A stretch of 64,000 bases of DNA, from IMG/VR virus record IMGVR_UViG_3300046808_001241, positions 1 to 64,000 of that record. One strand, given 5' to 3'. Below the pieces are notes generated by a model, which worked only from the letters and a program-made list of their open reading frames with translations, did no database searches and was not told the DNA's origin. A program made the position numbers and the translations under genes. Positions 1-16,341 of the stretch are shown in pieces (position 1 is the stretch's first letter; every line of letters begins with the position of its first letter).

Positions 1-223
1 AGAACAACCTCCTCTAATAGAAAGAATTGTATATGAAAGTAAATAGCCTAATCCTCCTAGCACTAATGCTTCCACTCGTTGGCTGTTCGACTGTTGATCA
101 AGCCAAGAAGGATTTCAAGAACTTTAAAGCCACTGTCCAATACAATGCAAAGGTCAAGCACTTTCCTGTAGTTGTTTTTAGGGATTGACCTGTCCAACCC
201 TCAACCCTATACTCAATACTGTT

Positions 224-403
224 ATGAATAAAACAACTACATACACAATCCAAGAACTTCTTAACAAGTACCCAGCTAATAAAGAGCTGAAAACTCTTGA
301 TTGGTCTAAGGATAAAGACGATCTTGAATTTGATATCAGTTCAATAATTGGTGGAGATTGGATTGTCGATCGTCAGAACAACACTGTCACAAATCTTCAT
401 TGA
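224..403 (+). CDS. early hypothetical protein
   Basis: ATG 39 nt after promoter 185; stop is the TGA of motif 400. Confidence 0.8.
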   Translation: MNKTTTYTIQELLNKYPANKELKTLDWSKDKDDLEFDISSIIGGDWIVDRQNNTVTNLH

Positions 404-435
404 CCTGTCCAACAACAATCTCTAGAATTAAAACC

Positions 436-618
436 ATGAAAGAACACGAACTTGTAAACTATTTGATTGAAGTCCTGGATTGGGCTTCGAATGAAGACAA
501 TATGGTCGTTGGTGTGGATACTTTTGAGAGTGCAGGACTTATGACTAACAACGAAGGTCTTGTAATCAAGATGAAGACTGGAGAAGTCTTTCAGCTGACG
601 GTCAAACAATCCCGTTGA
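436..618 (+). CDS. early hypothetical protein
   Basis: ATG after promoter 400; stop is the TGA of motif 615. Confidence 0.8.
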   Translation: MKEHELVNYLIEVLDWASNEDNMVVGVDTFESAGLMTNNEGLVIKMKTGEVFQLTVKQSR

Positions 619-652
619 CCTGTCCAACCCAAACTCCGATAGTAATACTGTT

Positions 653-913
653 ATGAACAACTACTACACTGACTACTCCAATATTGATCTCAACAGCGGA
701 TATCAAAAGGATTTGAACATCATTGATCCTCTTTCGTTTGCAGATCTTCTTTTAGAGATCAATTGCAACATTCCAAAGATCAACGAGCAGACCGTTCGTC
801 GTCAGTTCGAAGAAGATCTACAACGTACGATCGATTCTGCTCGAGAAGTCTTTGAAGCTAACTTGTCAAACATCGTCAAGCATGCAAACGACTATCGCAA
901 AGAATTAGTTTGA
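653..913 (+). CDS. early hypothetical protein
   Basis: ATG after promoter 615; stop is the TGA of motif 910. Confidence 0.8.
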   Translation: MNNYYTDYSNIDLNSGYQKDLNIIDPLSFADLLLEINCNIPKINEQTVRRQFEEDLQRTIDSAREVFEANLSNIVKHANDYRKELV

Positions 914-945
914 CCTGTCCAATCTAAATCTCTACAATCTTTCTC

Positions 946-1305
946 ATGATCAAATCGACACAAAAACACACAATTACCGTCAATGCAACAGATCTCAAAA
1001 AGAATCTGTGTGCTTCCTATCTGCAACTGCTTCAAGATGAACTGGATGCAAAGGAGATTGACTTCGAGTATTTCAAAATGGATCTCGATCGTTTCCAAGA
1101 CGAGCTGGATTCTGTTGTGAAGAGCGGGTTTGCACAATCGTTTCGCGACGGAAATACTATGATTTTATTGAACGGTGAAGACTTCGAATTCGTCGAGAAC
1201 TGGTTCGATAAGAACAAGAACCTCTCCGAAGAGCTTGTTGTGCGTATCCTCGATGATGAAGGTAATCAGATGGAAGTAGTTCAGCACGTTGATCTAAGCT
1301 ACTAA
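946..1305 (+). CDS. acidic early hypothetical protein
   Basis: 119 aa ORF after promoter 910. Confidence 0.8.
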   Translation: MIKSTQKHTITVNATDLKKNLCASYLQLLQDELDAKEIDFEYFKMDLDRFQDELDSVVKSGFAQSFRDGNTMILLNGEDFEFVENWFDKNKNLSEELVVRILDDEGNQMEVVQHVDLSY

Positions 1306-1319
1306 GAGGTTGGGTCGCT

Positions 1320-1361
1320 AAAAAAGGGGAGCTGGCAAGAATGCCTGGCGGCCAGCTCCCC
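1320..1361. terminator. GC-rich hairpin, probable terminator
   Basis: 11-bp stem GGGGAGCTGGC (1326-1336) / GCCAGCTCCCC (1351-1361); the A-tract before it gives a U-tract on the minus strand. Confidence 0.55.
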
Positions 1362-1418
1362 CCACGCGTGGGATTAATGTTGAGCAGTCCAGGCAAGTTG
1401 TTGAAGATTCTTTCTGTT

Positions 1419-2336
1419 ATGCAAGCTATTCAATCGAACAACACCACCAATAAAAACTTCACTCGTGTACGAGACGTTCAAGTTCCAGAGATCTTCTTTC
1501 GGAAGTTCAAGACTGGTATTGAAGATCTGGACGAAGCATTTGGTGGACAAGGATTTCTTCCTGGTTCTGTAATCACTCTTGCTGCTCCGGCTGGTGTTGG
1601 CAAGAGCTCGATTGCTTTGCAACTCCTTCAGTCATTGGAAGATATTGGTAAGAAGACTGCCTACATTTCTGGAGAAGAGACTTTGGAACAAGTTTCGTTT
1701 GCTGCTAAACGGTTGAGAGCTGAGTCTGTTCCTGTTGCCAATCTTGTTTATATTGAAGACATTGAAGAAGCTGTTGTTGAGTACGGCTTTAATTTTATTG
1801 TGTTGGATAGCTTTCCAACGATTGCAACTAAGCGGAAAGGAATGAGCTCCAGGGAGAAAGAAAGCTATGTTATTGGCAAGCTTGTTAATCTCGCAAAAGA
1901 ACGAGAGTGTTGCATGCTTATCATCCAACACTTTACGAAGAGTGGCAAATACAAAGGAGGTACGGAATTGATTCATGCTGCAGATGCTTTGTTCACTCTT
2001 GAGAAAAACCCTGACGATCACAATCTTAGAGATCTGATTTGTCACAAGAATCGTTTCGGTCAGTGCTCGTTCACTACCTTTCCTTTTGGGGCACAAGGAT
2101 ATACTTTCGAAGCCGTTGCTGCAGATAACAATCCAGAGCGCAAGTCTAGTGCAAAGAAAGAATCCAAAGCGGATCTCGTTCTTGACAGTCTTAGTGAACC
2201 AAAGAACGTTGCGCAAATTGTTCAAGAGACAGGCATTTCTGGACCATATCTTAACATGGTTCTTCGGCAGCTTGTTACAGAAGGCAAGATCAACAAAGAT
2301 GGTCGGGGAGCAGATGCACTGTACAAGAAGATCTGA
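1419..2336 (+). CDS. RadA/Sms-like RecA-fold ATPase with probable C-terminal winged helix
   Basis: TGIEDLDEAFGG, Walker A APAGVGKSS, Walker B IVLDS, ELIHAADA, KNRFG; start taken at the ATG after promoter variant 1380. Confidence 0.85.
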   Translation: MQAIQSNNTTNKNFTRVRDVQVPEIFFRKFKTGIEDLDEAFGGQGFLPGSVITLAAPAGVGKSSIALQLLQSLEDIGKKTAYISGEETLEQVSFAAKRLRAESVPVANLVYIEDIEEAVVEYGFNFIVLDSFPTIATKRKGMSSREKESYVIGKLVNLAKERECCMLIIQHFTKSGKYKGGTELIHAADALFTLEKNPDDHNLRDLICHKNRFGQCSFTTFPFGAQGYTFEAVAADNNPERKSSAKKESKADLVLDSLSEPKNVAQIVQETGISGPYLNMVLRQLVTEGKINKDGRGADALYKKI

Positions 2337-2357
2337 GTCGATATGCTCTTGAATCAT

Positions 2358-2391: not shown

Positions 2392-2478
2392 TCAGTGGAT
2401 ATGTGCACGGGCTCTGAAGCATTCTTTGAAAGATAATTGTTGAGCTGTCCAGGATCTGTCTCGAGAATAATAACTGTT

Positions 2479-2676
2479 ATGAACAACACCAATCACATCA
2501 TCAACGACTACTTGGAAGCACTAACCGAGCGAGCTGAAATGGCTGGAGACGATCGGTTAGCATATGCTATGGGCTTCCTGCTAGGATCCCTGAAGACTCT
2601 TGGCCTTCAAGGCTATGAGCTCGAAGTGCTTCAACGAGACACAGCTAACCTTCGCAACCTCATTGCTGGAAAGTAA
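2479..2676 (+). CDS. early hypothetical protein
   Basis: ATG 39 nt after promoter 2440. Confidence 0.75.
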   Translation: MNNTNHIINDYLEALTERAEMAGDDRLAYAMGFLLGSLKTLGLQGYELEVLQRDTANLRNLIAGK

Positions 2677-2679: not shown

Positions 2680-2949
2680 ATGACCACTCAACAAAACACT
2701 ATCAACCTTGTTCGATCGATCATGCGAGCAGGCGGCAAGACTCAAGTCTGGAACAACAAGTACGAAGACGGAGTCCGTACAGTGAAGTGCTACAGGGACA
2801 AAGACACATGCAAGGACTTACAACTCAAGGACATCATTGTTCAGACTCTTGGAGACTTGCACATTGATCATAAGATCAATTTCACATTGCCTTCAGGTGG
2901 TCCTTTCAATCCAGGCACGGGAGGATTTATTGTCAGGCTTCCTGCTTGA
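2680..2949 (+). CDS. early hypothetical protein
   Basis: 89 aa; stop is the TGA of motif 2946. Confidence 0.75.
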   Translation: MTTQQNTINLVRSIMRAGGKTQVWNNKYEDGVRTVKCYRDKDTCKDLQLKDIIVQTLGDLHIDHKINFTLPSGGPFNPGTGGFIVRLPA

Positions 2950-2990
2950 CCTGTCCGAGATCTGTCCCGAGAATAATAACTGTTATGAAC
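2946..2990 (+). repeat. 45-bp exact direct repeat (promoter plus start codon), also at 3239-3283
   Basis: TTGACCTGTCCGAGATCTGTCCCGAGAATAATAACTGTTATGAAC is identical at both sites; a near copy lies at 2440. Confidence 0.9.
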
Positions 2991-3242
2991 GACTCCAAAT
3001 CACTAATCCAAGAAGGCAAAGAACTCGAACAAGAGCTGAAGGCTCTGCACAAGAGGCTCAAGGCTGAGACTAAAGAGCTGAAGAAGAGGTACAGGGCACA
3101 CGTTAAGAGTGTCGACAAGTTCTGTGACAAGAACCAAGAGGATACAGATCTCTGTCTCAAAGTAGGAGCTCCTTTCGATCGTTGTGAGAGTGCTCTTTAT
3201 TACATCCCAGAAGTCTTCGAAGGCTGGAATAGTTTTAATTGA
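2985..3242 (+). CDS. early coiled-coil hypothetical protein
   Basis: after promoter 2946; stop in motif 3239. Confidence 0.75.
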   Translation: MNDSKSLIQEGKELEQELKALHKRLKAETKELKKRYRAHVKSVDKFCDKNQEDTDLCLKVGAPFDRCESALYYIPEVFEGWNSFN

Positions 3243-3277
3243 CCTGTCCGAGATCTGTCCCGAGAATAATAACTGTT

Positions 3278-3475
3278 ATGAACAACACTACCAAATTAGT
3301 CAAAATCCTCGAAGACGCTGGCAAATCGACCCACTACATCATTGGGAATTTGCAAGCAGTTCTGCAACTTCTCGAACGGGAATCTCCTGCTAATGCTAAG
3401 ATCCTCCAAGACTCTGTGAAGTATGCAGAGCAACTAATTCAAATGAACAAAGAAGAAGAAGCTAAACTCAAATGA
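3278..3475 (+). CDS. early hypothetical protein
   Basis: after promoter 3239. Confidence 0.75.
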   Translation: MNNTTKLVKILEDAGKSTHYIIGNLQAVLQLLERESPANAKILQDSVKYAEQLIQMNKEEEAKLK

Positions 3476-3851: not shown

Positions 3852-3937
3852 TTCATAACACGTCTGATGCGTACGGAACGCATCTTTTCATAACAAAAGA
3901 GAAGAGCTGCTGGATCTAGACTGGCAGCTCTTTTTCT
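3852..3937 (+). terminator. TTCATAACA - hairpin - TTTTCATAACA - terminator hairpin
   Basis: GATGCGT/ACGCATC stem (3866-3884), then GAAGAGCTGC/GCAGCTCTTT followed by a T tract. Confidence 0.75.
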
Positions 3938-3977
3938 TGTTGTCTTGTCCTCAGCTCTTCTCGAAGGTATTTGCATT

Positions 3978-4217
3978 ATGAAAAAGATCTACAAATACAA
4001 AAACCTCGGATATGCTCTTGCAGTCTTCTTCTATGTGGATCTGTCTGTGGCAGCCTTTGCGTACGTTGGCAAAGATGTTGTCAGAGACTATCAACTCAAA
4101 CGGGATGCAGAGAACATTCTGAACACTCCAGATCTCACTACTGGATTGGAAGAGCTTGAGCATGCCGTGCAGATGGACCTTGCCGACCTGGAGAAGACCT
4201 TCCAAAAGAATTCTTGA
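3978..4217 (+). CDS. early membrane-anchored hypothetical protein
   Basis: one hydrophobic segment; follows promoter variant 3940. Confidence 0.7.
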   Translation: MKKIYKYKNLGYALAVFFYVDLSVAAFAYVGKDVVRDYQLKRDAENILNTPDLTTGLEELEHAVQMDLADLEKTFQKNS

Positions 4218-4252
4218 TCTGTCCTAAAAGAATCCTGAATATAAAGACTGTT

Positions 4253-4468
4253 ATGGAAATCAAAAATCAAAGCCAGCTCCGAGAATTCTTTTGGGATGTT
4301 ATGTATCCTCGTTATACGCCAAAGAGGTTTTCCTCTTCTAAAAAATTCTATAGACAGAACGACTATTGTGCAGAGGTTCGAATGAACTGGGTTGACTTTG
4401 TCGATGTAATGCAACGAGAGGGACGAATCTCTGACAATCTAGCTCACACTGCTACTCTTCGAGCTTGA
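4253..4468 (+). CDS. early hypothetical protein
   Basis: after promoter 4214; stop in motif 4465. Confidence 0.75.
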   Translation: MEIKNQSQLREFFWDVMYPRYTPKRFSSSKKFYRQNDYCAEVRMNWVDFVDVMQREGRISDNLAHTATLRA

Positions 4469-4503
4469 CCTGTCCACCAACACTCTCTAAGATTATTACC
4501 GTT

Positions 4504-4707
4504 ATGAATACAACAACCCAACAATTCAATCGATCGTTTGTAGACAAGCTGAAAGGAAAAGGCTCGAAGTGGCTTACAGAGAGCATCCAAGTCGAAGAGC
4601 GCATGCTTAAGTTCTGCCCAGAGAGCGAACTTCCCAAGTACGAGCTTTACATTCAGGTCATGAAAAAAGCTCTCAATGAGCTTGACCTGTCCACAGCTGC
4701 TGCCTAA
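4504..4707 (+). CDS. early hypothetical protein
   Basis: after promoter 4465. Confidence 0.75.
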   Translation: MNTTTQQFNRSFVDKLKGKGSKWLTESIQVEERMLKFCPESELPKYELYIQVMKKALNELDLSTAAA

Positions 4708-4717
4708 GATTATCAAC

Positions 4718-4879
4718 ATGGACAAAGAAGTAAATCAAGCAGACTATCTTTTGCACGACTTGATTATCCCTACTGTTAATGAACACTTCAATGAAGACGA
4801 TCACTACGGAGTGTCTCGAATTGAAGACGATCGCAAAGAAGAAGATAGTCAACAAATGAACTTTTGGGGGAAGTGGTAG
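4718..4879 (+). CDS. early hypothetical protein
   Basis: after promoter 4682. Confidence 0.65.
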   Translation: MDKEVNQADYLLHDLIIPTVNEHFNEDDHYGVSRIEDDRKEEDSQQMNFWGKW

Positions 4880-5079: not shown

Positions 5080-5274
5080 ATGACTGCACGAGACCATCAA
5101 TTTGAAGTAGGGACTTGCCTGGAAGAGATCAAGCAGTTCCAAGACCGAGTCCTGGATGTCTATGATCCCAAGGACCAGAAGAAGATTGCTTTGCTGAAGG
5201 AACTGGTCTCCTTGCAAGCAGAACTGGAAGAATTGGATAAAGAGTTCGAGAACTATATCAAAGAGAATTGTTGA
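5080..5274 (+). CDS. coiled-coil hypothetical protein
   Basis: stop is the TGA of motif 5271. Confidence 0.7.
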   Translation: MTARDHQFEVGTCLEEIKQFQDRVLDVYDPKDQKKIALLKELVSLQAELEELDKEFENYIKENC

Positions 5275-5305
5275 CCTCTCCAAAGAGATTGACGAAGGTT
5301 ATTAC

Positions 5306-5620
5306 ATGAACAAAATATCTTTGATCCTTCTGGCAGCAGTGGCGATGACTCTCCAGGCTTGTTCCACCGGTGGATCTTATCAAGTAGGTTACTCCCGTGG
5401 TTATGTAAACAACTATTCTCCAACACGTACCTATTACAATCCTTATAACTCTTACAATCCTTACCAAACCTATTCCGTTGGCCCTCAATACTATAAGACA
5501 CGCGTTCCTTACTTCGGCCAACAAGTTCGGAACTATACTGGAACCCCAATCGCGATGCCCTCTTATAGTCCTTGTGGACAGCAGAGGTCTTCAATGATCA
5601 TCCCCAACAGCTGGAACTAA
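5306..5620 (+). CDS. Tyr/Asn/Pro-rich lipoprotein
   Basis: MNKISLILLAAVAMTLQAC lipobox; YNPY repeats; own promoter at 5271. Confidence 0.75.
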   Translation: MNKISLILLAAVAMTLQACSTGGSYQVGYSRGYVNNYSPTRTYYNPYNSYNPYQTYSVGPQYYKTRVPYFGQQVRNYTGTPIAMPSYSPCGQQRSSMIIPNSWN

Positions 5621-5628: not shown

Positions 5629-5790
5629 ATGAAATACGAAATCCTCAAAAATACTATCGGCGGTCTCATAATCTCTGCAACACTCATCGGAATGGCAATC
5701 CCAAAAGAATCCGGAATGCTTGATGTGGTACTCTTTGCAGCAATGATGACGACCTTCCTCTACGTCGTGCTGCCGACTCAAAAGAGTTGA
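5629..5790 (+). CDS. small two-TM membrane protein
   Basis: two hydrophobic segments; stop in motif 5787. Confidence 0.65.
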   Translation: MKYEILKNTIGGLIISATLIGMAIPKESGMLDVVLFAAMMTTFLYVVLPTQKS

Positions 5791-5825
5791 CCTGTCCAAG
5801 AAGAATATAGATTATAAAGACTGTT

Positions 5826-5993
5826 ATGAACGATCTATTCCTTAAAGCAATCGCACAAGACATTACCTTCGCAGCCCACGTGATGGCAAAGATTATGGGA
5901 GGACTTTTCCTCAGCCCTGACGCAATTGCCATCTGTGTGGTCTTCGGTCTTGGGTTCTTGGCCTTCTGGCTCAAAGCTAAATTGAACGCTTAA
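5826..5993 (+). CDS. small membrane protein (55 aa, not in ORF track)
   Basis: ATG 39 nt after promoter 5787; hydrophobic C-terminal half. Confidence 0.7.
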   Translation: MNDLFLKAIAQDITFAAHVMAKIMGGLFLSPDAIAICVVFGLGFLAFWLKAKLNA

Positions 5994-6198: not shown

Positions 6199-6314
6199 CA
6201 GACCCTCCGTGGCCAGGGAACAAGGCCACCTTTTCATAACTAGGACAGAGCTTCTGCCGAATCAAGCTCAAAAAGAAAGACTCAGAGATCAGACTCTGGG
6301 TCTTTTTTCTTTTT
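6191..6314 (+). terminator. TTTCATAAC - hairpin - TTTTCATAAC - hairpin - terminator
   Basis: GTGGCC/GGCCAC, GAGCTT/AAGCTC and AAAGACTCAGAG/CTCTGGGTCTTT stems, then a long T tract. Confidence 0.75.
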
Positions 6315-6351
6315 GTTGACATGTCCAACAACATAGCTGACTCTATTAAAG

Positions 6352-7218
6352 ATGACACAAAGAAAAATTACCTCCGTGATGGTTACTGAAGGACGACTGG
6401 TTGCTTATGATGGCAGCGAAAAGGTCAAAGAGTTCGGGCAAAACTTCGTTGCAGCTGCTACAGCTTCCCCGGAGAAGGTTATTACCGTTAACAAGTACGG
6501 CCATGTAGAAGAGTGGAAGTTTGATCCAAAGTTCCCTTCTCTAGATAAAGTTCGCATGTGGGGCACTTCTGATAGTCCTGTGAGCATTAGCGCTAGTGGA
6601 AACAATTGCAACGTCACGAGGTCTAATGGCCAGACTGACATGTATATCAACGGACAGAAGTCTCGTACTGTTGGTACTGCTAATACTCCCAAGACCTCTA
6701 GCGAACCTTCTTCTAGTAAGGACTATCAACCAGAACAGCCTTATCAACAATCGGATACTTCATATGCTGACATTCCGGATGGGTTTATGGCAGGAATGGG
6801 TCACAGGTGTAAGGTATTGATCACTGAGCCAATTCCAGGACCTTGGGCAAAGATTGTTGTGTGGTTTACAGCGATCTCCTCTGCTGTGGCAGCTGGCGTT
6901 GTTTTGTATAATACTGGCGAAGCAGATCCAAGTCTTATTGTCTCGGCGCTTGGCCTCGTAGTAGTTAATGCTGGACTTAGCTACTGGCTTCGACATGCAA
7001 TTGCTAAGGTTCTAGTACGGTCTTGGTACGGAGCTCCTCTTGTCATTCTTGGAGCTCTGATCAGCCAAACGTATCCAGACATCGGAGGGATTATTATAGC
7101 GGCAGGAGCAATTGCGTGGTTGTGGCCCATTTGGCCAATTGCATTGATTGTGATTTGTGTAGTGTTTGTAGTGATGGCAGCAGTAGGCAAATCTGTTCCT
7201 ACAATGGATCGTCGGTAA
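6352..7218 (+). CDS. membrane protein with soluble N-terminal domain and multi-TM C-terminus
   Basis: 288 aa; about 4-5 hydrophobic segments at the C-terminus; own promoter at 6316. Confidence 0.8.
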   Translation: MTQRKITSVMVTEGRLVAYDGSEKVKEFGQNFVAAATASPEKVITVNKYGHVEEWKFDPKFPSLDKVRMWGTSDSPVSISASGNNCNVTRSNGQTDMYINGQKSRTVGTANTPKTSSEPSSSKDYQPEQPYQQSDTSYADIPDGFMAGMGHRCKVLITEPIPGPWAKIVVWFTAISSAVAAGVVLYNTGEADPSLIVSALGLVVVNAGLSYWLRHAIAKVLVRSWYGAPLVILGALISQTYPDIGGIIIAAGAIAWLWPIWPIALIVICVVFVVMAAVGKSVPTMDRR

Positions 7219-7314: not shown

Positions 7315-7512
7315 CAATGGGAATTACCCTGCAGAAGATTCTCGTTGAGGTCATCAAGGAAAGACTTGAATGTGTCTGCATGATATTTAGAGCACAACTA
7401 CACATCCTTTGCATGATCAAGAATCCTTCGAAGTGGAGATTCTATTTGAAGGGAATCTTGAGAGAGTTTGGGATTGACCTGTCCAAGAACTGACAGGACT
7501 ATAGAGACTGTT

Positions 7513-7761
7513 ATGAACGCTACATCTACTACACCACAACACAAATCATTCACACGAGTCGTCCCCCACAAGTACTTCATGGACCTTGTCAAGGAGGCTC
7601 GTAGGGTCAAGTACATCATCAAGCAAGAGGGTCAGCACCTGTACGATGTGCGGGACGACGAGACTGGGGAGAAGGTCTTCTTTGGCATGAAGCACTCTTC
7701 AGGCAAGTGGATTGCTTCCTTCTCTACAGCATATTGGCAAGAGCCTGCACTGCCAGCTTGA
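7513..7761 (+). CDS. early hypothetical protein
   Basis: after promoter 7474. Confidence 0.8.
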   Translation: MNATSTTPQHKSFTRVVPHKYFMDLVKEARRVKYIIKQEGQHLYDVRDDETGEKVFFGMKHSSGKWIASFSTAYWQEPALPA

Positions 7762-8713: not shown

Positions 8714-8941
8714 ATGAGCACACACAACTATAGGCAAGACATGGAGCGGATGGAAGCCAAGGAGAAGATCGAGCGGCTTGAATGGGAGCTAGCTTGTGAG
8801 AAGGAGTGGACTGAGAAGCTGCAGAAGATAGCACGGGAGCATTATAAAAGTGCAGAGACAGCTAGACAAGAGCGAGACGAGGCTCGCAAAGATGCAGAGT
8901 ACCACAAAGCCCGCTACGACGTACTGAGGGAGAGCTGGTAA
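8714..8941 (+). CDS. early coiled-coil hypothetical protein
   Basis: after promoter 8679. Confidence 0.75.
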   Translation: MSTHNYRQDMERMEAKEKIERLEWELACEKEWTEKLQKIAREHYKSAETARQERDEARKDAEYHKARYDVLRESW

Positions 8942-9202
8942 CATCTTATAACTAAACGACTTATCAATATTGTGGAATGTGTCTTCGCTGGGGGAGTGTT
9001 CGAGGGCCAGTGGGTGGGACTGGATGAAGTGGAAGTAGTGGAGAGCTTCCAGAAGCAATTGGTTCCCAATAATAGGTTTATAACTTCTCCCTTCTGTACG
9101 TTCTTTTATAGGGGCAACAAGTACACGTCTCAGGTGACAAAGAGGCCGACATGGGTCTTTGAATAGTTGACCTGTCCTATAGTCTCCCTGAAAGTCTTTC
9201 TC

Positions 9203-9430
9203 ATGCACACAACCCAAACTCTCATCAATCAACTGATCAAGACTCTCGCCGAACAACTCCGGGCAGTTGATAATGCTACTCTGGGACTGAAGAGTACCTA
9301 CAAGAAGATCGCTCAGTGTTCCAAGACAGTGGCACAGCTTGAGAAGCTCGGAGTGGATCACAACACAGCATACGACAGGGCTGACTTGATCAATGGAGTA
9401 GCGGATCGCGAGACTCTTGGAATGGCTTAA
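9203..9430 (+). CDS. early hypothetical protein
   Basis: after promoter 9167. Confidence 0.75.
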   Translation: MHTTQTLINQLIKTLAEQLRAVDNATLGLKSTYKKIAQCSKTVAQLEKLGVDHNTAYDRADLINGVADRETLGMA

Positions 9431-9434: not shown

Positions 9435-9698
9435 ATGATACTCAATCTATTCCCTCACCTTAAAGGCTACAAAGTACTTCATGGATCTCCGGGGTGCGAG
9501 ACTCCAGAGACTATCAAATCGATTCGGACTGATAGGATTAAGAAGAGCTTCCTGACTCTAGAGTTCGACAGTGGAGTCTTCACCTACATTAACAAAGAAG
9601 ACTTTGATCGGTTCCTGGAAGAAGGAAAGGTATACTTCCAGCGAGCGGCAGGCAGGATGGGCTTCGAAGCTCCAGAGAGTTTGGTTGACCTGTCCTGA
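9435..9698 (+). CDS. hypothetical protein
   Basis: ends inside motif 9685; start uncertain. Confidence 0.65.
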   Translation: MILNLFPHLKGYKVLHGSPGCETPETIKSIRTDRIKKSFLTLEFDSGVFTYINKEDFDRFLEEGKVYFQRAAGRMGFEAPESLVDLS

Positions 9699-9723
9699 GA
9701 CTTTATAGAATATCAATATCGTT

Positions 9724-10062
9724 ATGAGAATAAATACTCCATTCACAATCACTAGCCGTATTGCAGAAGCTCTTGGACTTCCTGACAGCCATATGGCGGA
9801 TGCTCTTCTGATCACTCGGTACAAAGCTGTTGCAGAGATTGTCTCCAGCTTCCTGAACTATACAGATAACAAGATCGCTTCTCAGCAAGGGTTCTTTGCT
9901 TCTATGATCATTCGGATCCTTCTCCCTAATGACAAGGCCGTGCACTTCTCTGATATGCAGACGGTTATCAATATCATCATGAATGGGGAGAAGGCTATAC
10001 AGGAAGAGATGAAGCAGGAGAGGGAAGACTGGAGAGCGGCGCGGGAACTTGCTACTGCTTAA
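9724..10062 (+). CDS. early hypothetical protein
   Basis: after promoter 9685. Confidence 0.75.
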   Translation: MRINTPFTITSRIAEALGLPDSHMADALLITRYKAVAEIVSSFLNYTDNKIASQQGFFASMIIRILLPNDKAVHFSDMQTVINIIMNGEKAIQEEMKQEREDWRAARELATA

Positions 10063-10239: not shown

Positions 10240-10283
10240 TCTTATCTATTGACTTGTCCAACGATTGGTCTTAATATTATCTC

Positions 10284-10856
10284 ATGATTAAAACAGCTAA
10301 GAAGAAAAAAGCAGCGAAGGGCAAAGGGTTCAAGATTAAACCAATCCCGTTGAGTGAAGAGCAGATCACAATGTTTGTTAGTCATTATAAACAGTTTAAG
10401 TCTTTTCCTGGCTCAAAGATCCCTTGCACTATTACTGGAAAGCTAACTACTTGTGTAGGGCCTTGGATGCAGAAGAAGATCAAGGAGTTCGGTTCAGCGG
10501 AGTCCTTGTTGCGCAACTACCAATGCAGGGGAGCTCTTAAAGACCAAAGGATTAAAGCAAAGCCTCAGAAGGTTAAACGGAAGAGTAAAGTAAAGGATCT
10601 TATTGAAAAGGAAGAGGGTAAGTATAACATTCCTTCCATGGATAGTTTTGTAAAGCCCACACCATATGATCCCGCAAAAGAATCTGAGTCCGTCTGCTTG
10701 CGGCCCGATATCTTTCTGTCGAACGATCGGCATTGTGATGGATGTCACCACTTTAAGATCTGCCGCAGCCGTCTCAAGAATCTTCCAAAGCATGTTTCAT
10801 TTGATGGAAACAGCTTTGTGTACGATGAAGGTTACAAGACAAAGAAAAAGAAATGA
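10284..10856 (+). CDS. Lys-rich early protein with Cys/His cluster, possible nucleic-acid binder
   Basis: very basic; C-x9-H-C-x2-C-HH-x3-C; promoter at 10249. Confidence 0.75.
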   Translation: MIKTAKKKKAAKGKGFKIKPIPLSEEQITMFVSHYKQFKSFPGSKIPCTITGKLTTCVGPWMQKKIKEFGSAESLLRNYQCRGALKDQRIKAKPQKVKRKSKVKDLIEKEEGKYNIPSMDSFVKPTPYDPAKESESVCLRPDIFLSNDRHCDGCHHFKICRSRLKNLPKHVSFDGNSFVYDEGYKTKKKK

Positions 10857-10969
10857 TCTGGTACATCTATATAGCCTTCATGTCAATACTGATTACTGTC
10901 AACCTCTATGAGTGGTACAAAAAGGTAAAGTAGTTGACGTGTCCGAAGCCTTTCCGGAATATAGACAAC

Positions 10970-11482
10970 ATGACACAGAAGAAGATCTCAATGAATAGGC
11001 GGAAGCTTTCTTCGCCGTACTTCTCAATAAGAAAGGAGAAGGTCAAGTGGCCAACTATCCGCGGAGCATATATGACGGATAGCAATGTGCCTGTACTCAA
11101 AGACTTTGTAACGAAGAAGGGTCGTTCGATTATCTTTCTGGATGGGAAGTATGATACTACTCTGAATCGTTATAAGAATCTTCCATCCGAAGAGCGAGCG
11201 ATCGCTTGGGAGTTCATGTGCAGAGAGAATGGAGTCAAAGGAGGGATCTTCATGCTGTGCTGGCTTGGGAACTTCCACAATGGGTGCATCTTCCATGCCT
11301 CTCCTCAGTTCCCACAGATTCAATGCTGGTATGAACAGATGGGAGTAGAGAGGGCTAATGCGTTCTTCGAGAGGCAAGCATTCAAGATCTATAACGAAGT
11401 GGTAAAGATTGTACACAATGGTGGTTCGATTGTGGATAAAGAAGTGCAAGAGTTTATAACTAATGGCACCAACAAAGTTTAA
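10970..11482 (+). CDS. early hypothetical protein
   Basis: after promoter 10934. Confidence 0.75.
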   Translation: MTQKKISMNRRKLSSPYFSIRKEKVKWPTIRGAYMTDSNVPVLKDFVTKKGRSIIFLDGKYDTTLNRYKNLPSEERAIAWEFMCRENGVKGGIFMLCWLGNFHNGCIFHASPQFPQIQCWYEQMGVERANAFFERQAFKIYNEVVKIVHNGGSIVDKEVQEFITNGTNKV

Positions 11483-12054: not shown

Positions 12055-12078
12055 GGGAGTTGTAGTTTAAATAAGTTT

Positions 12079-12684
12079 ATGAAATTTGATGAGGCAATAG
12101 ACACCTATCTAGCTACATCATTCTTTGTGGAGAGTCCGATGTATTATGATGGGTTGTTTAATGAGCAGATGAATGACATTGAACACAATAAACAAATTGC
12201 TCAGAACATCATATCTAGCAACAAACCTTTTGATAGATTTGAAAGTTGGGTTGTATATAGAGTCGTTGATGGCTTTGATGAAGACATACGGACGTTTTGT
12301 TTAATTAAAGATGGGTTAGTTGATGCTTTTATGGAGATAGCAACTAGTAAAGACAACTACTTCAGCAGAGGAGTGTGGCAGAGAAACACGGCTGATAATA
12401 AAGGTTTAATTAGAAACTTTATTCTTAATTTTTTACCAAAGCACTATACTTCATTAATCTCCGACAAAACAGCTAACAAACTGGGCATTAAATTTTATAA
12501 AAAACTTCTAGATGTTTGCATACAAAAAGGATTAAAAGTGACCGTTCTTAAAGGATCTCTTAAAAACGAAATTCCTTATCATGCAAATCAGTTTGAAAGC
12601 TATTGGCACAATGTCAATAGAGATGTTCCTACGCATCCTACATTCGTAACAACAAAGGATGATTTGTTTAAGATTTATTTTTGA
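12079..12684 (+). CDS. ESP-family paralog 1 (possible GNAT-like fold)
   Basis: TAAATA at 12068; VESP, SDKTANKLGIKFYKKLL, FESYWH, LFKIYF match 61397 and 13782. Confidence 0.75.
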   Translation: MKFDEAIDTYLATSFFVESPMYYDGLFNEQMNDIEHNKQIAQNIISSNKPFDRFESWVVYRVVDGFDEDIRTFCLIKDGLVDAFMEIATSKDNYFSRGVWQRNTADNKGLIRNFILNFLPKHYTSLISDKTANKLGIKFYKKLLDVCIQKGLKVTVLKGSLKNEIPYHANQFESYWHNVNRDVPTHPTFVTTKDDLFKIYF

Positions 12685-13073: not shown

Positions 13074-13108
13074 TTGACATGTCCGATAAGGCAACTGACT
13101 ATTATTGA

Positions 13109-13291
13109 ATGAAGACAGACGAATATTTTGTAGAGACTGTTCCGTGCGTCCATGTAGGTGATGAGGAATGGATTCCTACAGATAAAGTTGAATTTGTAGA
13201 TATCTGTGAGGATTTCTGCGGTTATGATCTAATGACGTTTATTTATAAAGGCAAACAAATGCAATCTAAAATTACCACTAGGCCAGTATAA
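13109..13291 (+). CDS. early hypothetical protein
   Basis: ATG 35 nt after promoter 13074. Confidence 0.75.
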   Translation: MKTDEYFVETVPCVHVGDEEWIPTDKVEFVDICEDFCGYDLMTFIYKGKQMQSKITTRPV

Positions 13292-13781: not shown

Positions 13782-14369
13782 ATGACTTTAAAATTTGAAA
13801 AGTTTCTAAATTACTATAACAGACACGAAAGAATTCTAAATGAATCTCCGGTTAGATTAGGAAGACAATACAGCGAAGAGTTAGACAACAACTGGTTTAA
13901 TGTTGAAACGGCTAAGGAAACTTTAGAAGATTCCTCGTTTGAGAAAGTTCTTTCGAAAGAAGTATTTGACGTTAATTTAAACTTATTTAGAGATGTTTAC
14001 GAAGAAGATAAGTTTCAAGATTATTGGATGACTGATCAGCCGTTTATAAGTTGTTATTTTCTTTTTCAAAAGTCTGGAAAAGGTTTACAATCACTGAGAG
14101 TTTGGAACCATAAAGCATTTAAAGGAACTGCAAAAGATTTGTTTTTTTCTTATTATTTGCAAAATTTTGATTTTATTATAAGTGATAACAAACATTCTGA
14201 TCAAGGAGAATCATACTGGAAGAAGATTGTTAAAATTGCTCGAACTAACGGAAACGCAGTTACAGTTATTGCCAGAGACGGAATCGAAAGCGATCTAAAA
14301 AATTTAGATGGTCTTTGGGGAAGTTCTGAAGAGTTCTCAAAATTTAGAATTAAAGTTTTTAAAAGATAA
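13782..14369 (+). CDS. ESP-family paralog 2 (possible GNAT-like fold)
   Basis: TAAATA at 13760; LNESP, SDNKHSDQGESYWKKIV. Confidence 0.75.
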   Translation: MTLKFEKFLNYYNRHERILNESPVRLGRQYSEELDNNWFNVETAKETLEDSSFEKVLSKEVFDVNLNLFRDVYEEDKFQDYWMTDQPFISCYFLFQKSGKGLQSLRVWNHKAFKGTAKDLFFSYYLQNFDFIISDNKHSDQGESYWKKIVKIARTNGNAVTVIARDGIESDLKNLDGLWGSSEEFSKFRIKVFKR

Positions 14370-14377
14370 ATAACTTC

Positions 14378-14668
14378 ATGAAATCCAAAGACCAACAACT
14401 CCTAGAAGAAGCTTATACTAAAATCAACGAACAAGAAGAGCAAGGCTTTAGTTACTACTCCGGTCCCTCGGAAGATGTAATGTTCTTAGAAGATTTGGAT
14501 GTAGACAACTTTAAAAGAAAAGTTCAAGAGGGACAGCACTTTAAAACAGCTTATGTTGCTCATAAAGCTGATGCTGTGAACTACGGATATCCGGACGAAG
14601 GAGCTCATGAGTTTTATGTTTTTTACGACAAACAAGACTTTGCTCATCCTGCGTTGATTCCTGTCTAA
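14378..14668 (+). CDS. putative late internal head protein
   Basis: TAAATA at 14367; MKSKDQQLLEEAY. Confidence 0.7.
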   Translation: MKSKDQQLLEEAYTKINEQEEQGFSYYSGPSEDVMFLEDLDVDNFKRKVQEGQHFKTAYVAHKADAVNYGYPDEGAHEFYVFYDKQDFAHPALIPV

Positions 14669-14702
14669 CGAATATTTTCCCGTCGGGAGAATAAGTAATT
14701 AA

Positions 14703-15005
14703 ATGAAGAAACAAATTACTCTTAAGCAGGCACATGACTTGCTTCAAATATCACCAGTTATCGGTTTAGAAGGTAGATATATTGTTCCTTCATTGTTTGA
14801 GTTAGAAGGAGAAGAGGGATCTGAATTCTGTGTATTGTACTGGACGGAGATTTATAAAGAAGATCCTGTCGATTTTACAGTCGTGTTTGAAGAGGGAGAT
14901 AACAAAAAATGCGAACTTGATGGTTGTGAGCTTGTGCTCGTAAACAACGAAGGAGAAGAAGAAGTTCTTCAATTATTAGTTCCTCATTATCCTGAATTTG
15001 ATTAA
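14703..15005 (+). CDS. acidic hypothetical protein
   Basis: 100 aa ORF. Confidence 0.65.
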   Translation: MKKQITLKQAHDLLQISPVIGLEGRYIVPSLFELEGEEGSEFCVLYWTEIYKEDPVDFTVVFEEGDNKKCELDGCELVLVNNEGEEEVLQLLVPHYPEFD

Positions 15006-15013
15006 ATAATTTT

Positions 15014-15106
15014 ATGACAGGATTTCTAATCCTACACGGCGCAGTGACATTGGTTTGTTTTATTATTGCAATTATAGGAATTAGAGAAGATATAAAAAGA
15101 CGTTGA
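15014..15106 (+). CDS. 30-aa hydrophobic peptide
   Basis: TAAATA at 15003; single TM; stop is the TGA of motif 15103. Confidence 0.45.
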   Translation: MTGFLILHGAVTLVCFIIAIIGIREDIKRR

Positions 15107-15137
15107 CCTACCCAAACAACGATAGGATTATGTCTTA

Positions 15138-15455
15138 ATGACCGCTGCTAAAACCTACGCTGTTAATTCTAATTCAACTTCTATTAACGGAACTCAATAT
15201 TTGGGTTATGTAACCATCACTTACGACGAGCTCGTAAAAACGCTTGGCCAACCAAAGGAAGGCAGTGCTGATGGAAAAACTACATGCGAATGGCATGTAG
15301 AATTCGAAGATGGGTCAGTAGCTACAGTGTATGACTGGAAGGTTGGATATACGCCTAAAAATTTGCATGATTGGCATGTCGGAGGAAGGTCAGGGATTGC
15401 TCTCGATTATCTAGAAGAAGTTTTAGAAAAACAAATCACTCGTTCAAAATACTAA
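15138..15455 (+). CDS. phage hypothetical protein
   Basis: GKTTCEW...ATVYDWK pattern; promoter at 15103. Confidence 0.8.
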   Translation: MTAAKTYAVNSNSTSINGTQYLGYVTITYDELVKTLGQPKEGSADGKTTCEWHVEFEDGSVATVYDWKVGYTPKNLHDWHVGGRSGIALDYLEEVLEKQITRSKY

Positions 15456-15461
15456 TTTATT

Positions 15462-15752
15462 ATGACTCAACACACTACTATTAATGATTTAGTTTCAGCG
15501 ACAAAACGGAAAATCAGCGACATAAACAGCATTGTTGATGTATTGCTTTCTGGATATCGTACAGCTTCAGAATTGCTAGATGATCAAATTGATCACAGAA
15601 AGACATACGTCGACCAGTTACAAGAATTAAACAAAGAGCTCTCAGCAATTACTGATGGTCACCCAGCGCTTAAAACAGAAAAACTTGCTCAAGACGTTTT
15701 TGCTAGTTTGGTTAATATAGCATGCGGTGACAGCTTTTCAGCTAAAATATAA
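15462..15752 (+). CDS. coiled-coil hypothetical protein
   Basis: 96 aa ORF. Confidence 0.65.
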   Translation: MTQHTTINDLVSATKRKISDINSIVDVLLSGYRTASELLDDQIDHRKTYVDQLQELNKELSAITDGHPALKTEKLAQDVFASLVNIACGDSFSAKI

Positions 15753-15762
15753 AACACTGATA

Positions 15763-15942
15763 ATGAAGGGATATTGGGATCATAAAACAAAGCCTTCTAC
15801 GTTTGTTGTTGTAAAAGATGGACAGGAAATTTATAGAGGACCGTTTGAAGGTGGATATAAATTAATTTCTCTTAACAGGTGTTATAAAACAGAGGTAGCA
15901 AAATATTTCAAGGAGCCTGAATGTCTCACTCCTAAAAAATAA
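15763..15942 (+). CDS. hypothetical protein
   Basis: ends just before promoter 15944. Confidence 0.55.
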   Translation: MKGYWDHKTKPSTFVVVKDGQEIYRGPFEGGYKLISLNRCYKTEVAKYFKEPECLTPKK

Positions 15943-15978
15943 GTTGTCTTGTCCGTTTACAGAATGGACTATAGTTCT

Positions 15979-16341
15979 ATGATTAAATCAAATGTAACTG
16001 TATATCGAGCTCCGTGGATTACTCTTTTGCGTTTCGATGATCGAGAAAATTGGTTTATAGCAAGAGAGCCTGGGTTCTCTTATCAAAGTAAGCTGAAAGG
16101 AGAAGAAGCAGCAGAGGAGGCTTTTCATCTTACAAATGCTCCAGAAGATTGTTTGGAAGACGATCATAAAGAAATTCTTGCAGAACAACAATTTAAAGGA
16201 CCTTCTTTGTCCGTGGGAGATATAGTAAGAGTTGAACCTATTGTAAAAGGGTCTAAAATGCCAGAATACTATCTGTGTAAGTCTTTTGGTTGGGAGAAGT
16301 ACGGAGGAGATGTAATTCAATTGTTAAAACACTTACTATGA
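15979..16341 (+). CDS. hypothetical protein with SLSVGDIV motif
   Basis: ATG 35 nt after promoter 15944. Confidence 0.75.
   Translation: MIKSNVTVYRAPWITLLRFDDRENWFIAREPGFSYQSKLKGEEAAEEAFHLTNAPEDCLEDDHKEILAEQQFKGPSLSVGDIVRVEPIVKGSKMPEYYLCKSFGWEKYGGDVIQLLKHLL

What the first reader, a model, noticed from the sequence alone, without database searches (positions are those of the whole stretch)
185..15979. Early genes look leaderless, and the -10 element often begins with G
Seen: ATG sits at only four offsets from the motif start: +35 (5306, 8714, 10284, 13109, 15138, 15979), +36 (436, 946, 4718, 6352, 9203, 10970), +38 (653, 3978) and +39 (11 genes, nearly all ending GTTATG). The -10 ends at +28, so leaders would be 0-4 nt, and no Shine-Dalgarno sequence is present. 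Many -10 boxes read GAGAAT, GACTAT, GAATAT, GACAAT, GATTAT or GAAGGT instead of TATAAT. Inference: the early programme uses leaderless translation, which could survive shut-off of SD-led host mRNA. It may rely on a host sigma factor tolerant at -12 or on compensation by the extended -35.
Basis: partly seen in the sequence, partly recalled or inferred. Interest (0 to 1): 0.6.

Follow-up and report, generated by a model that had tools for sequence, protein, structure and literature searches.

The report
Phage promoters butt against start codons
A large freshwater T4-like phage places all three of its promoter types directly against the start codon and has no ribosome-binding (Shine-Dalgarno) sites anywhere, so it probably expresses its whole genome from leaderless messages plus translational coupling, not only its early genes.

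Summary
All 25 motif copies lie at the stated coordinates. They read TTGACCTGTCC, 12 nt, (T/G)AnnAT, and the ATG follows at +35, +36, +38 or +39. G opens the -10 in 19 of 25.

The motif has every sequence feature of a sigma-70-type promoter. ATG at +35/+36 falls on the two preferred start positions, 7 and 8 bp after the -10. The +38/+39 class keeps a purine there, giving a 3-nt GUU leader.

- **Genome:** the window is the first 64 kb of a 217-kb distant T4-like phage with a gp55 late sigma factor.
- **Late genes:** the T4-type late box TAAATA ends 5 nt before the ATG at 32 sites, which again puts the start on the A.
- **Replication genes:** plain TTGA/-10 promoters also abut their ATGs.
- **Other genes:** 137 of 314 ORFs are coupled to the upstream stop codon.
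- **Shine-Dalgarno:** enrichment is nil here (0.10 against a 0.10 background). It is 0.56 in T4 and 0.47 in a pelagiphage.
- **Relatives:** related contigs share all of this.

So escape from a shut-off of SD-led host mRNA is not supported. An SD-independent host is more likely. No transcription start was measured. Thermus phages are the known precedent.

The parts
185..226 (+). Early promoter (TTGACC, 17 nt, TATACT) with ATG at +39; predicted start at G+36, leader GUU.
400..438 (+). Early promoter, -10 TAGAAT, ATG at +36. The TGA inside the -35 is the stop codon of the upstream ORF.
615..655 (+). Early promoter, -10 GATAGT, ATG at +38 (G-TT-ATG). The upstream stop codon lies inside the -35.
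910..948 (+). Early promoter, -10 TACAAT, ATG at +36. The upstream stop codon lies inside the -35.
1380..1421 (+). Weaker early promoter (TTGAGCAGTCC, -10 GAAGAT), ATG at +39. It heads the RecA/DnaB-superfamily ATPase gene, which follows a hairpin at about 1320-1370.
2440..2481 (+). Early promoter, -10 GAGAAT, ATG at +39.
2946..2987 (+). Early promoter, -10 GAGAAT, ATG at +39. The upstream stop codon lies inside the -35.
3239..3280 (+). Early promoter, identical over the scored 29-nt promoter to the copy at 2946, ATG at +39. The upstream stop codon lies inside the -35.
3899..3980 (+). Terminator hairpin (3899-3935) followed at once by an early promoter at 3940 (-10 GAAGGT), ATG at +38.
4214..4255 (+). 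Early promoter (TTGATC, -10 GAATAT), ATG at +39. The upstream stop codon lies inside the -35.
4465..4506 (+). Early promoter, -10 TAAGAT, ATG at +39. The upstream stop codon lies inside the -35.
4682..4720 (+). Early promoter, ATG at +36. The TAA of its -10 (4705-4707) is the stop codon of the upstream ORF.
5271..5308 (+). Early promoter (TTGACCTCTCC, -10 GAAGGT), ATG at +35. It heads a small lipoprotein-like ORF.
5787..5828 (+). Early promoter, -10 GATTAT, ATG at +39. The upstream stop codon lies inside the -35.
6273..6354 (+). Terminator hairpin (6273-6308) followed by an early promoter at 6316 (-10 GACTCT), ATG at +36.
7474..7515 (+). Early promoter, -10 GACTAT, ATG at +39.
7934..7975 (+). 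Early promoter, -10 GACAAT, ATG at +39. The upstream stop codon lies inside the -35.
8646..8716 (+). Terminator hairpin (8646-8671) followed by an early promoter at 8679 (-10 GACTAT), ATG at +35.
9167..9205 (+). Early promoter, -10 GAAAGT, ATG at +36.
9685..9726 (+). Early promoter, -10 GAATAT, ATG at +39.
10249..10286 (+). Early promoter (TTGACT, -10 TAATAT), ATG at +35.
10934..10972 (+). Early promoter (TTGACG, -10 GAATAT), ATG at +36. Near-identical promoters (same -10, discriminator and ATG offset) occur in relatives L077 and L121; the downstream genes were not compared.
13074..13111 (+). Early promoter (TTGACA, -10 GACTAT), ATG at +35.
15103..15140 (+). Weaker early promoter (TTGACCTACCC, -10 GATTAT), ATG at +35.
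15944..15981 (+). Weaker early promoter (TTGTCTTGTCC, -10 GACTAT), ATG at +35.
12068..12081 (+). T4-type late box TAAATA, 5 nt, then ATG.
14367..14380 (+). Late box GATAAATA, 5 nt, then ATG.
28966..28980 (-). Late box GATAAATA, 6 nt, then ATG.
29139..29152 (+). Late box TAAATA, 5 nt, then ATG.
37950..37963 (-). Late box GATAAATA, 5 nt, then ATG of a 454-aa gene. It lies back to back with the next part.
37996..38009 (+). Perfect T4 late box TATAAATA, 5 nt, then ATG.
42544..42557 (-). Late box TAAATA, 5 nt, then ATG.
53899..53916 (+). Late box TAAATA, 9 nt, then ATG (short-leader class); glycosyltransferase gene.
44849..45382 (+). gp55-like late sigma factor gene, followed by gp47- and gp46-like genes as in T4.
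38877..38913 (+). Plain sigma-70-like promoter (TTGACA, 16 nt, TAAACT, 6 nt) set against the ATG at 38911.
52044..52084 (+). Plain promoter (TTGAAA, TATACT, 8 nt) before the ATG of the gp46/SbcC-like gene.
55135..55174 (+). Plain promoter (TTTGAT/TTGATC, TACATT, 7 nt) before the ATG of the DNA polymerase gene.
58428..58467 (+). Plain promoter (TTGAAA, GATATT, 8 nt) before the ATG of the UvsX-like gene. Its residue 1 aligns with position 1 of the family profile.
62862..62900 (+). Plain promoter (TTGAAA, 16 nt, TAAGTA, 7 nt) before the ATG at 62898.

Best explanation
**What it is.** The repeated motif is a family of sigma-70-type early promoters: an extended -35 (TTGACCTGTCC), a 17-bp spacer and a -10 of the form (T/G)AnnAT. 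Each sits so that RNA polymerase should start either on the A of the AUG (ATG at +35/+36) or on a conserved purine 3 nt before it (ATG at +38/+39, RNA beginning GUUAUG).

**How it works.** Each small early gene is its own transcription unit. The intergenic space is just the promoter, and the upstream stop codon is often inside the -35. Translation would begin on a 5'-terminal or near-terminal AUG without any Shine-Dalgarno pairing.

**It is the phage's general design, not an early speciality.**
- gp55-type late promoters (TAAATA, 5 nt, ATG) are placed the same way.
- So are the plain TTGA/-10 promoters of replication genes.
- Genes without a promoter overlap or nearly touch the upstream stop (ATGA, TAAnATG), which fits termination-reinitiation.

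**Shown here:** the motifs, their spacings, their statistics, their conservation in relatives, and the absence of SD.

**Inferred:** the actual transcription start sites, the leaderless mode of ribosome binding, which sigma factor reads the early promoters, the 'early' timing, and the host.
For: **Early sites**
- All 25 sites were verified, and seven more lie elsewhere in the genome.
- The spacer is 17 nt throughout, A-11 and T-7 are invariant, and information is near zero in the spacer, so these are not recent copies.
- A pyrimidine-purine step lies at position 7 or 8 after the -10 in 27 of 32 sites. This matches the E. coli rule of a modal start at 7, then 8 (PMC5730371).
- Lambda PRM/cI has the same layout: -10, 6 nt, ATG.
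- All 32 promoter-proximal starts are ATG and, in the window, open ORFs of 53-305 codons.
- In 11 of 25 promoters the TGA inside the -35 ends an upstream ORF of at least 51 codons.

**Late genes**
- A gp55 homologue is present (phrog_234, E = 1e-17).
- The T4 late box lies at -13..-6 (PMC1524935).
- Counts of ATG after TAAATA are 32 at 5 nt and 14 at 6 nt, against about 2-3 at other spacings. Composition-matched control hexamers show no peak at 5 nt.

**Third promoter class**
- TTGA is enriched 34-36 nt before the ATG of uncoupled genes (8, 5 and 6 of 94). Coupled genes show no such peak.

**Shine-Dalgarno 4-mer before ORFs of at least 120 aa**
- This phage 0.10 (background 0.10); relatives 0.09.
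- T4 0.56 (background 0.06); pelagiphage Mosig 0.47 (0.05); cyanophage S-CAM1 0.22 (0.09).

**Relatives**
- 47 of 53, 13 of 16 and 8 of 8 matrix hits have ATG at +35..+39.
- They share the TAAATA peak at 5-7 nt.
- A more distant relative has both promoter types set against ATGs.

**Gene-start tally**
- 261 of 314 starts are either promoter-abutting or within 15 nt of an upstream stop.
Against: - No 5' end was measured. The only RNA library holding this phage is kept as assembled contigs, which cannot show starts.
- Three of those contigs run across promoters (388-669, 2408-2684, 2998-3315). This means read-through transcripts or DNA carry-over.
- The start-site rule comes from E. coli RNA polymerase, and the host is unknown.
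- A 3-nt leader strongly lowers leaderless translation in E. coli (my own knowledge of the leaderless-mRNA literature), so the +38/+39 class may use another route.
- Gene calls were crude (ATG-only, codon-score based). 53 starts fit no class.
- The role of the conserved TGTCC after the -35 is unexplained.
Confidence: 0.7

Rival explanations
1. Leaderless initiation is a speciality of the early programme that lets early mRNAs be translated after the phage shuts off SD-dependent host translation.
For: Early genes do have the leaderless layout and no SD. The phage encodes its own ribosomal protein bS21 in the early-type region, so some tampering with initiation is conceivable.
Against: The layout and the lack of SD are genome-wide, including late structural genes and internal operon genes. 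A shut-off of SD-led translation would therefore not separate early from other phage messages. Lineages with the nearest bS21 are themselves SD-poor (PMC10783764).
Confidence: 0.08
2. The promoters are real, but most protein comes from read-through polycistronic RNAs by SD-independent internal initiation, as in Bacteroidota-like hosts. On this view the closeness of promoter and ATG reflects genome compaction and cassette structure, not a need for a 5'-terminal AUG.
For: Few terminators separate early genes (4 clear hairpins in 16 kb). RNA-library contigs span promoters. Sequence before the ATG is A-rich and G-poor everywhere. Promoter repeats act as recombination joints in related populations, as described for T4 PeSL cassettes (PMC2839356, PMC4122927).
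Against: Compaction alone does not predict single-nucleotide registers (+35/+36, or a purine at +35/+36). It also does not predict the same register for an unrelated promoter type (TAAATA, 5 nt), or the absence of this register in compact T4, pelagiphage and cyanophage genomes.
Confidence: 0.12
3. The motif is read by something other than the host's primary sigma factor: a phage-modified polymerase, an alternative host sigma, or a factor bound at TGTCC. The start site could then differ from the sigma-70 rule.
For: The five bases after the -35 (TGTCC) are as conserved as the -35 itself and are absent from the plain promoters of replication genes. G at -12 dominates only in this class in this phage.
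Against: The -35, 17-nt spacer and -10 invariants are classic for primary sigma factors. No sigma-70 region 2 match was found in the genome; the only sigma-like gene detected is the gp55 homologue. A purine at position 7/8 is conserved, as the primary-sigma rule predicts.
Confidence: 0.07
4. The conserved 29-39 nt act in RNA rather than in DNA, for example as a processing site or a translational enhancer at a fixed distance before each AUG of a long early transcript.
For: The distance to the ATG is fixed, and there are long terminator-free runs of genes on the same strand.
Against: Information is concentrated exactly at -35 and -10 positions with an uninformative 12-nt core. No conserved pairing potential was seen in that uninformative core; folding was not tested. 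The -35/-10 pair keeps a rigid 17 nt while the distance to the ATG varies by 4 nt.
Confidence: 0.03

Closest known systems
Thermus phages phiYS40 and Lalka27a (most transcripts leaderless)
   Same: The phage genome as a whole, and more than one temporal class, starts transcripts on the A or G of the initiator codon, with host-type promoters set against ORFs (bioRxiv 10.64898/2026.04.20.719267).
   Different: Those cases are experimentally mapped, the phages are not T4-like, and they infect a Deinococcus-Thermus host known for leaderless mRNAs (PMC12340547). Here there is no mapping, the phage is a mesophilic freshwater T4-like phage with gp55-type late promoters, and the host is unknown.
Lambda PRM/cI leaderless mRNA and lambda PR
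   Same: PRM reads -10 TAGATT, 6 nt, ATG, the same register as the +35 class. PR reads TTGACT, 17 nt, GATAAT, so it also has a G-initial -10 with a near-consensus -35.
   Different: In lambda this is one gene in an SD-using genome. Here it applies to dozens of genes in a genome without SD.
T4-type PeSL cassettes (early promoter plus stem-loop) in hyperplastic regions
   Same: Repeated early promoters flank small ORFan genes on one strand, and some are immediately preceded by a terminator hairpin (3899, 6273, 8646). Contigs from related populations join cassettes in other orders, with joints at the repeats (PMC2839356, PMC4122927).
   Different: Only a minority of promoters here have a hairpin. 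T4 genes are mostly SD-preceded (SD 4-mer before 0.56 of ORFs), whereas here the promoter abuts the ATG.
T4 late promoters (gp55, TATAAATA at -13..-6)
   Same: The motif is the same (the first T is poorly conserved, as in other T4-like phages) and a gp55 homologue is present.
   Different: In T4 the ATG follows mainly at 21-23 nt or more, and in S-CAM1 at 18 nt or more. Here it peaks at 5-6 nt.
SD-independent initiation in Bacteroidota and some Verrucomicrobiota
   Same: SD is absent across the genome and the sequence before starts is A-rich and G-poor.
   Different: The promoters here are TTGACA/TATAAT-like, not the Bacteroidota TTTG/TAnnTTTG type (the Bacteroidota consensus is from my own knowledge). 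The phage bS21 is nearer to proteobacterial and verrucomicrobial bS21 than to that of Flavobacterium johnsoniae.

Membership tests
Sigma-70-type (primary sigma) promoter | -35 hexamer close to TTGACA | tested here: met
   The hexamer is TTGACC in 15 of 25 sites and matches TTGACA at 4 or more of 6 positions in 23 of 25; the two TTGTCT sites (3940, 15944) match at 3 of 6.
Sigma-70-type (primary sigma) promoter | Spacer of 17 +/- 1 bp | tested here: met
   Exactly 17 nt in all 25 window sites and in the 7 further sites.
Sigma-70-type (primary sigma) promoter | -10 hexamer with A at -11 and T at -7 | tested here: met
   Both are invariant in 25 of 25. The base at -12 is T or G.
Sigma-70-type (primary sigma) promoter | Transcription actually starts 6-9 bp after the -10 | not testable with these tools
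   Only assembled RNA contigs were available. The sequence context fits, with a pyrimidine-purine step at position 7/8 in 27 of 32 sites.
Leaderless mRNA | 5' untranslated region of about 0-5 nt | tested here: inconclusive
   Predicted to be 0-1 nt for the +35/+36 class and 3 nt for the +38/+39 class from promoter geometry. No 5' end was measured.
Leaderless mRNA | AUG initiator and no Shine-Dalgarno sequence | tested here: met
   32 of 32 starts are ATG. There is no SD enrichment.
Leaderless mRNA | Ribosome binding depends on the 5'-terminal AUG | not testable with these tools
   Needs toeprinting or reporter assays.
T4-type late promoter (gp55-dependent) | TATAAATA-like box about 10 bp before the start, with no -35 | tested here: met
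   TAAATA is invariant and A-rich on both flanks, with no conserved upstream element. It is placed 5-6 nt before the ATG at 46 sites.
T4-type late promoter (gp55-dependent) | Phage gp55 late sigma factor | tested here: met
   Window 44849-45382 matches phrog_234 at E = 1.1e-17 and T4 gp55 by tblastn at 6e-5. It is next to a gp47-like gene, as in T4.
T4-type late promoter (gp55-dependent) | gp33 co-activator and gp45 clamp | not tested
   Not searched for.
PeSL cassette (T4-type promoter-early stem-loop) | Composite of an early promoter and an adjacent terminator stem-loop | tested here: inconclusive
   Hairpins lie directly before 3 of 25 promoters (3940, 6316, 8679), and a further hairpin lies about 10 nt before the promoter at 1380.
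PeSL cassette (T4-type promoter-early stem-loop) | Serves as a joint for indels and shuffling between related phages | tested here: met
   Contigs in two DNA runs join 228 to 615, 229 to 2997, 240 to 967, 3230 to 615 and 4259 to 3991, that is, at promoter or ATG repeats. These are short contigs, so this is moderate evidence.

The most novel reading that the evidence does not exclude
A clade of freshwater T4-like jumbo phages, possibly infecting Verrucomicrobiota, has given up 5' leaders and Shine-Dalgarno sites altogether. Every transcription unit, whether read by host sigma or by the phage's gp55, begins on or 3 nt before an AUG. All other genes are translated by reinitiation at the preceding stop. 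The phage-encoded bS21 may help tune ribosomes to this mode.
Probability: 0.35. Interest if true: 0.75.

Novelty: new member of a known kind. Interest (0 to 1): 0.6.

Why it matters
**Scale of the effect.** If the predicted start sites hold, this is a mesophilic, uncultured T4-like phage lineage in which leaderless initiation is the rule for the whole genome and not an oddity of one gene. The gp55-type late promoter has been moved to the start codon as well.

**What it would offer.**
- A natural set of about 100 promoter-AUG junctions in two registers (0-1 nt and 3 nt) for studying what a 5'-terminal AUG needs.
- A warning for annotation. SD-based gene callers and start predictors will misplace starts in such genomes; for example, the -35 TTG is in frame with the +36 and +39 starts.
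- A possible marker for host prediction, since the host is probably SD-independent.
- A link between phage-borne bS21 and an unusual initiation regime.

The compact design, with the stop codon inside the next gene's -35 or -10, is also a neat example for synthetic biology.

Tried and rejected
- **Close relatives in GenBank phages:** megablast of 7.7 kb of the early region found nothing.
- **Relatives through the ATPase:** a search of IMG/VR with the early-region ATPase gave no confirmed relative.
- **Motif scan of IMG/VR:** the 15 specified bases gave mostly single chance hits. Only L077, L108 and L121 were true relatives.
- **RNA evidence:** the one RNA run holding the phage is kept as contigs. 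There is no start information, and the contigs cross promoters.
- **Host inference:**
  - Relatives cannot be drawn for a virus record.
  - The word search with bS21 returned only environmental phage-like copies.
  - The genome scan with bS21 gave only Verrucomicrobiota at 44-58% identity, but it is biased by exact peptide patterns and those genomes have 56-72% G+C.
  - The phage tmRNA has no real match in five verrucomicrobial genomes.
  - An Opitutaceae sample shows no peak in TTGAC-to-ATG spacing.
  - The same sample shows a weak excess of TAnnnT starting at -12 (7 of 181 starts).
  - I therefore treat the host as unresolved.
- **Bacteroidota host:** considered because SD is absent and bS21 is present. 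It became less likely because the promoters differ and the bS21 is unlike that of F. johnsoniae.
- **SAR11/LD12 host:** considered because of pelagimyophage bS21. It became less likely because pelagiphage Mosig uses SD and the tmRNA here is one-piece.
- **Early proteins:** Pfam found nothing in ten of them.
- **Other family searches:** no sigma-70 region 2 gene and no DUF1501 in this genome.
- **phiKZ as a precedent:** rejected, because no leaderless transcripts were detected there.

Full report
**Where the window lies.** The window is bases 1-64000 of a 217,182-bp IMG/VR virus record. Its 128-bp end repeat marks a circular or permuted assembly. The record encodes T4-type replication and recombination proteins: a gp43-like polymerase about 32% identical to those of cyanophages and pelagiphages, UvsX, gp46/gp47 and a DnaB-like helicase. 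It also encodes a gp55-like late sigma factor, 13 tRNAs and a tmRNA. It has no close relative among GenBank phages. Near-identical DNA occurs in freshwater and estuary metagenomes from 14 studies.

A at position 2 and T at position 6 are invariant. The ATG lies at +35 (6 sites), +36 (6), +38 (2) or +39 (11, all ending GTTATG).
- G opens the hexamer in 19 of 25 sites.
- A weight matrix from these sites finds 37 places in the genome scoring 12 bits or more, against 0-3 in shuffles. Of these, 31 have ATG at +35..+39.
- The new sites lie at 204804-216827, so the region continues across the record ends. Two more lie at 76224 and 121569.
- T4, pelagiphage Mosig, cyanophage S-CAM1 and 400 kb of an Opitutaceae genome give 3-11 matrix hits each, none with ATG at +35..+39.
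- Each of the 25 ATGs opens an ORF of 53-305 codons, where a random ATG in this region gives a median of 21.

**Why it is a promoter aimed at the AUG.**
- Information is concentrated at the -35 (plus five following bases) and at A-11 and T-7. The spacer is rigid at 17 nt and carries no information. This is the signature of a primary-sigma promoter, and it shows the copies are not recent duplicates.
- In E. coli the modal start is 7 bp after the -10, then 8. Starts more than 2 bp further downstream are rare. A purine preceded by a pyrimidine is preferred (PMC5730371).
- Offset +35 is position 7 and +36 is position 8, so in 12 window genes the A of ATG sits on the preferred start.
- In the +38/+39 class, positions 7/8 hold a conserved G (once an A) after a pyrimidine, followed by TT and then ATG. 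That gives a 3-nt leader.
- Overall, 27 of 32 sites have the pyrimidine-purine step at position 7 or 8.
- Lambda PRM, the classic leaderless case, reads TAGATT, 6 nt, ATG of cI, which is the +35 register.

**The G at -12.** It is real but has precedent. Lambda PR reads TTGACT, 17 nt, GATAAT. From my own knowledge, lambda PL and T7 A1 read GATACT. In related contigs T predominates: 42 T against 10 G in one contig and 10 T against 4 G in another. The position is therefore loosely constrained. A near-consensus -35 with an ideal spacer is a sufficient, though untested, explanation.

**Compact cassettes.**
- In 11 of 25 promoters the TGA inside TTGAC is the stop codon of the upstream ORF. At 4705 the TAA of a -10 is the upstream stop.
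- Terminator hairpins sit directly before the promoters at 3940, 6316 and 8679.
- Contigs from two other metagenomes join cassettes in different orders, with joints at the promoter/ATG repeats. This is like the PeSL cassettes of T4-type phages (PMC2839356; PMC4122927).
- Ten early proteins have no Pfam match.

**The feature is genome-wide.**
- *Shine-Dalgarno.* SD-like 4-mers at -18..-4 occur before 10.5% of non-early genes and 9.5% of random positions. G is depleted and A enriched before starts. With one crude pipeline for all genomes, the values are: this phage 0.10 (background 0.10), relatives 0.09, T4 0.56 (0.06), Mosig 0.47 (0.05) and S-CAM1 0.22 (0.09).
- *Late genes.* The T4 late box lies at -13..-6 (PMC1524935). 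Here TAAATA is followed by ATG after exactly 5 nt at 32 places and after 6 nt at 14, against about 2-3 at other spacings. The sites include genes of 1328, 1091, 706 and 665 codons. Five intervening bases put the start on the A of ATG. T4 and S-CAM1 show broad maxima at 18-23 nt or more.
- *Replication genes.* The polymerase, UvsX and gp46 genes, among others, have plain TTGA(A/C/T)N, about 17 nt, TAAGTA/TATACT/TACATT promoters ending 5-9 nt before the ATG. TTGA is enriched 34-36 nt before uncoupled starts and not before coupled ones.
- *Tally of 314 ORFs.* 137 start within 15 nt of, or overlapping, an upstream stop (44 as ATGA). 30 are early-type, 52 late-type and 27 plain -35/-10. 15 have a -10-like hexamer only, and 53 are unclassified.

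**Relatives.**
- Three IMG/VR contigs share the architecture. ATG lies at +35..+39 in 13 of 16, 47 of 53 and 8 of 8 matrix hits.
- For two of these contigs (G001, G002), for which the rest of the record was fetched, there is also no SD and the TAAATA peak lies at 5-7 nt.
- In them the 3-nt leader reads GUA, AUA, GAA or AAG, so the register is conserved, not the letters.
- A more distant contig, found through a bS21 that is 72% identical, again has both promoter types set against ATGs.

**Host.**
- The phage encodes bS21 at 216510-216713 of the record.
- A pattern-biased scan of 185,579 species genomes returned only Verrucomicrobiota at 44-58% identity.
- Among solved ribosomes, the phage bS21 is nearer to gammaproteobacterial bS21 (1e-7) than to that of Flavobacterium johnsoniae (4e-3).
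- A relative carries a DUF1800/DUF1501 pair whose nearest Atlas cluster is mostly verrucomicrobial.
- Some Verrucomicrobiota are reported as SD-scarce (PMC10783764). In agreement, 71 rpsU loci and a 400-kb Opitutaceae sample show no SD enrichment. That sample also has a weak excess of TAnnnT starting 12 nt before starts.
- Against this, those genomes have 56-72% G+C, the tmRNA finds no match in them, and the TTGAC-to-ATG spacing shows no peak.
- I leave the host open. The data favour an SD-independent host over an SD-using one.

**What remains inferred.** No transcription start was measured. The single RNA library with this phage is held as contigs. It shows 100%-identical pieces over the early region, some crossing promoters, which means read-through or DNA carry-over. 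The 'early' timing, the sigma factor that reads the motif, and the role of the conserved TGTCC are also inferences.

**Comparison and novelty.** Genome-wide leaderless expression is documented for Thermus phages phiYS40 and Lalka27a. A -10 adjacent to ORFs is common in Deinococcus-Thermus (PMC12340547). By contrast, phiKZ has no leaderless transcripts. This phage is a new member of that kind in an unrelated lineage. Its particular features are T4-type late promoters moved onto the AUG, a second 3-nt-leader register, stop codons inside the next promoter, complete lack of SD, and a phage bS21.

Noticed in passing
G000:C1:216510-216713 (outside the window; L127:1486-1689): The phage encodes ribosomal protein bS21 (67 aa; Pfam 59 bits). 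Upstream lie a perfect TATAAATA box and a long hairpin ending in a T-run, at L127 about 1382-1470.
   Followed up: partly
window 24603-25036 and 19632-19706: A one-piece tmRNA gene is present, with a tag ending ...YELAA. ARAGORN also calls a tRNA with a four-base anticodon (gacg). Twelve other tRNAs are clustered at 21105-27047, apart from one at 3774.
   Followed up: no
window 1-12000 against 12000-64000: The early-type region has 41-46% G+C. The rest of the window has 32-42%, mostly 32-36%.
   Followed up: no
window 228-4464 (joints): Contigs in two other metagenomes join early cassettes in other orders (228 to 615, 229 to 2997, 240 to 967, 3230 to 615, 4259 to 3991). The joints lie at the promoter/ATG repeats, which suggests recombination at promoters.
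   Followed up: partly
window 33-188, 3472-3618, 5306-5620: Three small ORFs have lipoprotein-type signal peptides (LVGC, ATGC, LQAC). The first two are paralogues. They could be candidates for superinfection exclusion.
   Followed up: no
G000:C1:215700-216450 (L127:680-1430): About 750 bp have no sizeable ORF and no Rfam match apart from a neighbouring tRNA. This could be an uncharacterised RNA or an origin-like region.
   Followed up: partly
window 37950-38009; also G000 102668/102719 and 202553/202613: Back-to-back divergent late boxes each sit 5-8 nt from their own ATG, so the genes in a pair start only about 50-60 bp apart.
   Followed up: no
L269:6689-9419 (contig of a relative): A related phage carries a DUF1800/DUF1501 gene pair beside its bS21. 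The nearest Atlas cluster is mostly Verrucomicrobiota, which is a lead on the host. This genome has no DUF1501.
   Followed up: partly
L249-L268 (Opitutaceae chromosome sample): This verrucomicrobial genome shows no SD enrichment (0.07 against 0.12 background). It has a weak excess of TAnnnT starting exactly 12 nt before start codons, which hints at some leaderless genes in that lineage.
   Followed up: partly
window 1341-2336: The ORF of the early-region RecA/DnaB-superfamily ATPase can start at 1341, but the promoter-proximal ATG is at 1419. Family matches begin near residue 30-44 of the long form, which favours the shorter start.
   Followed up: partly
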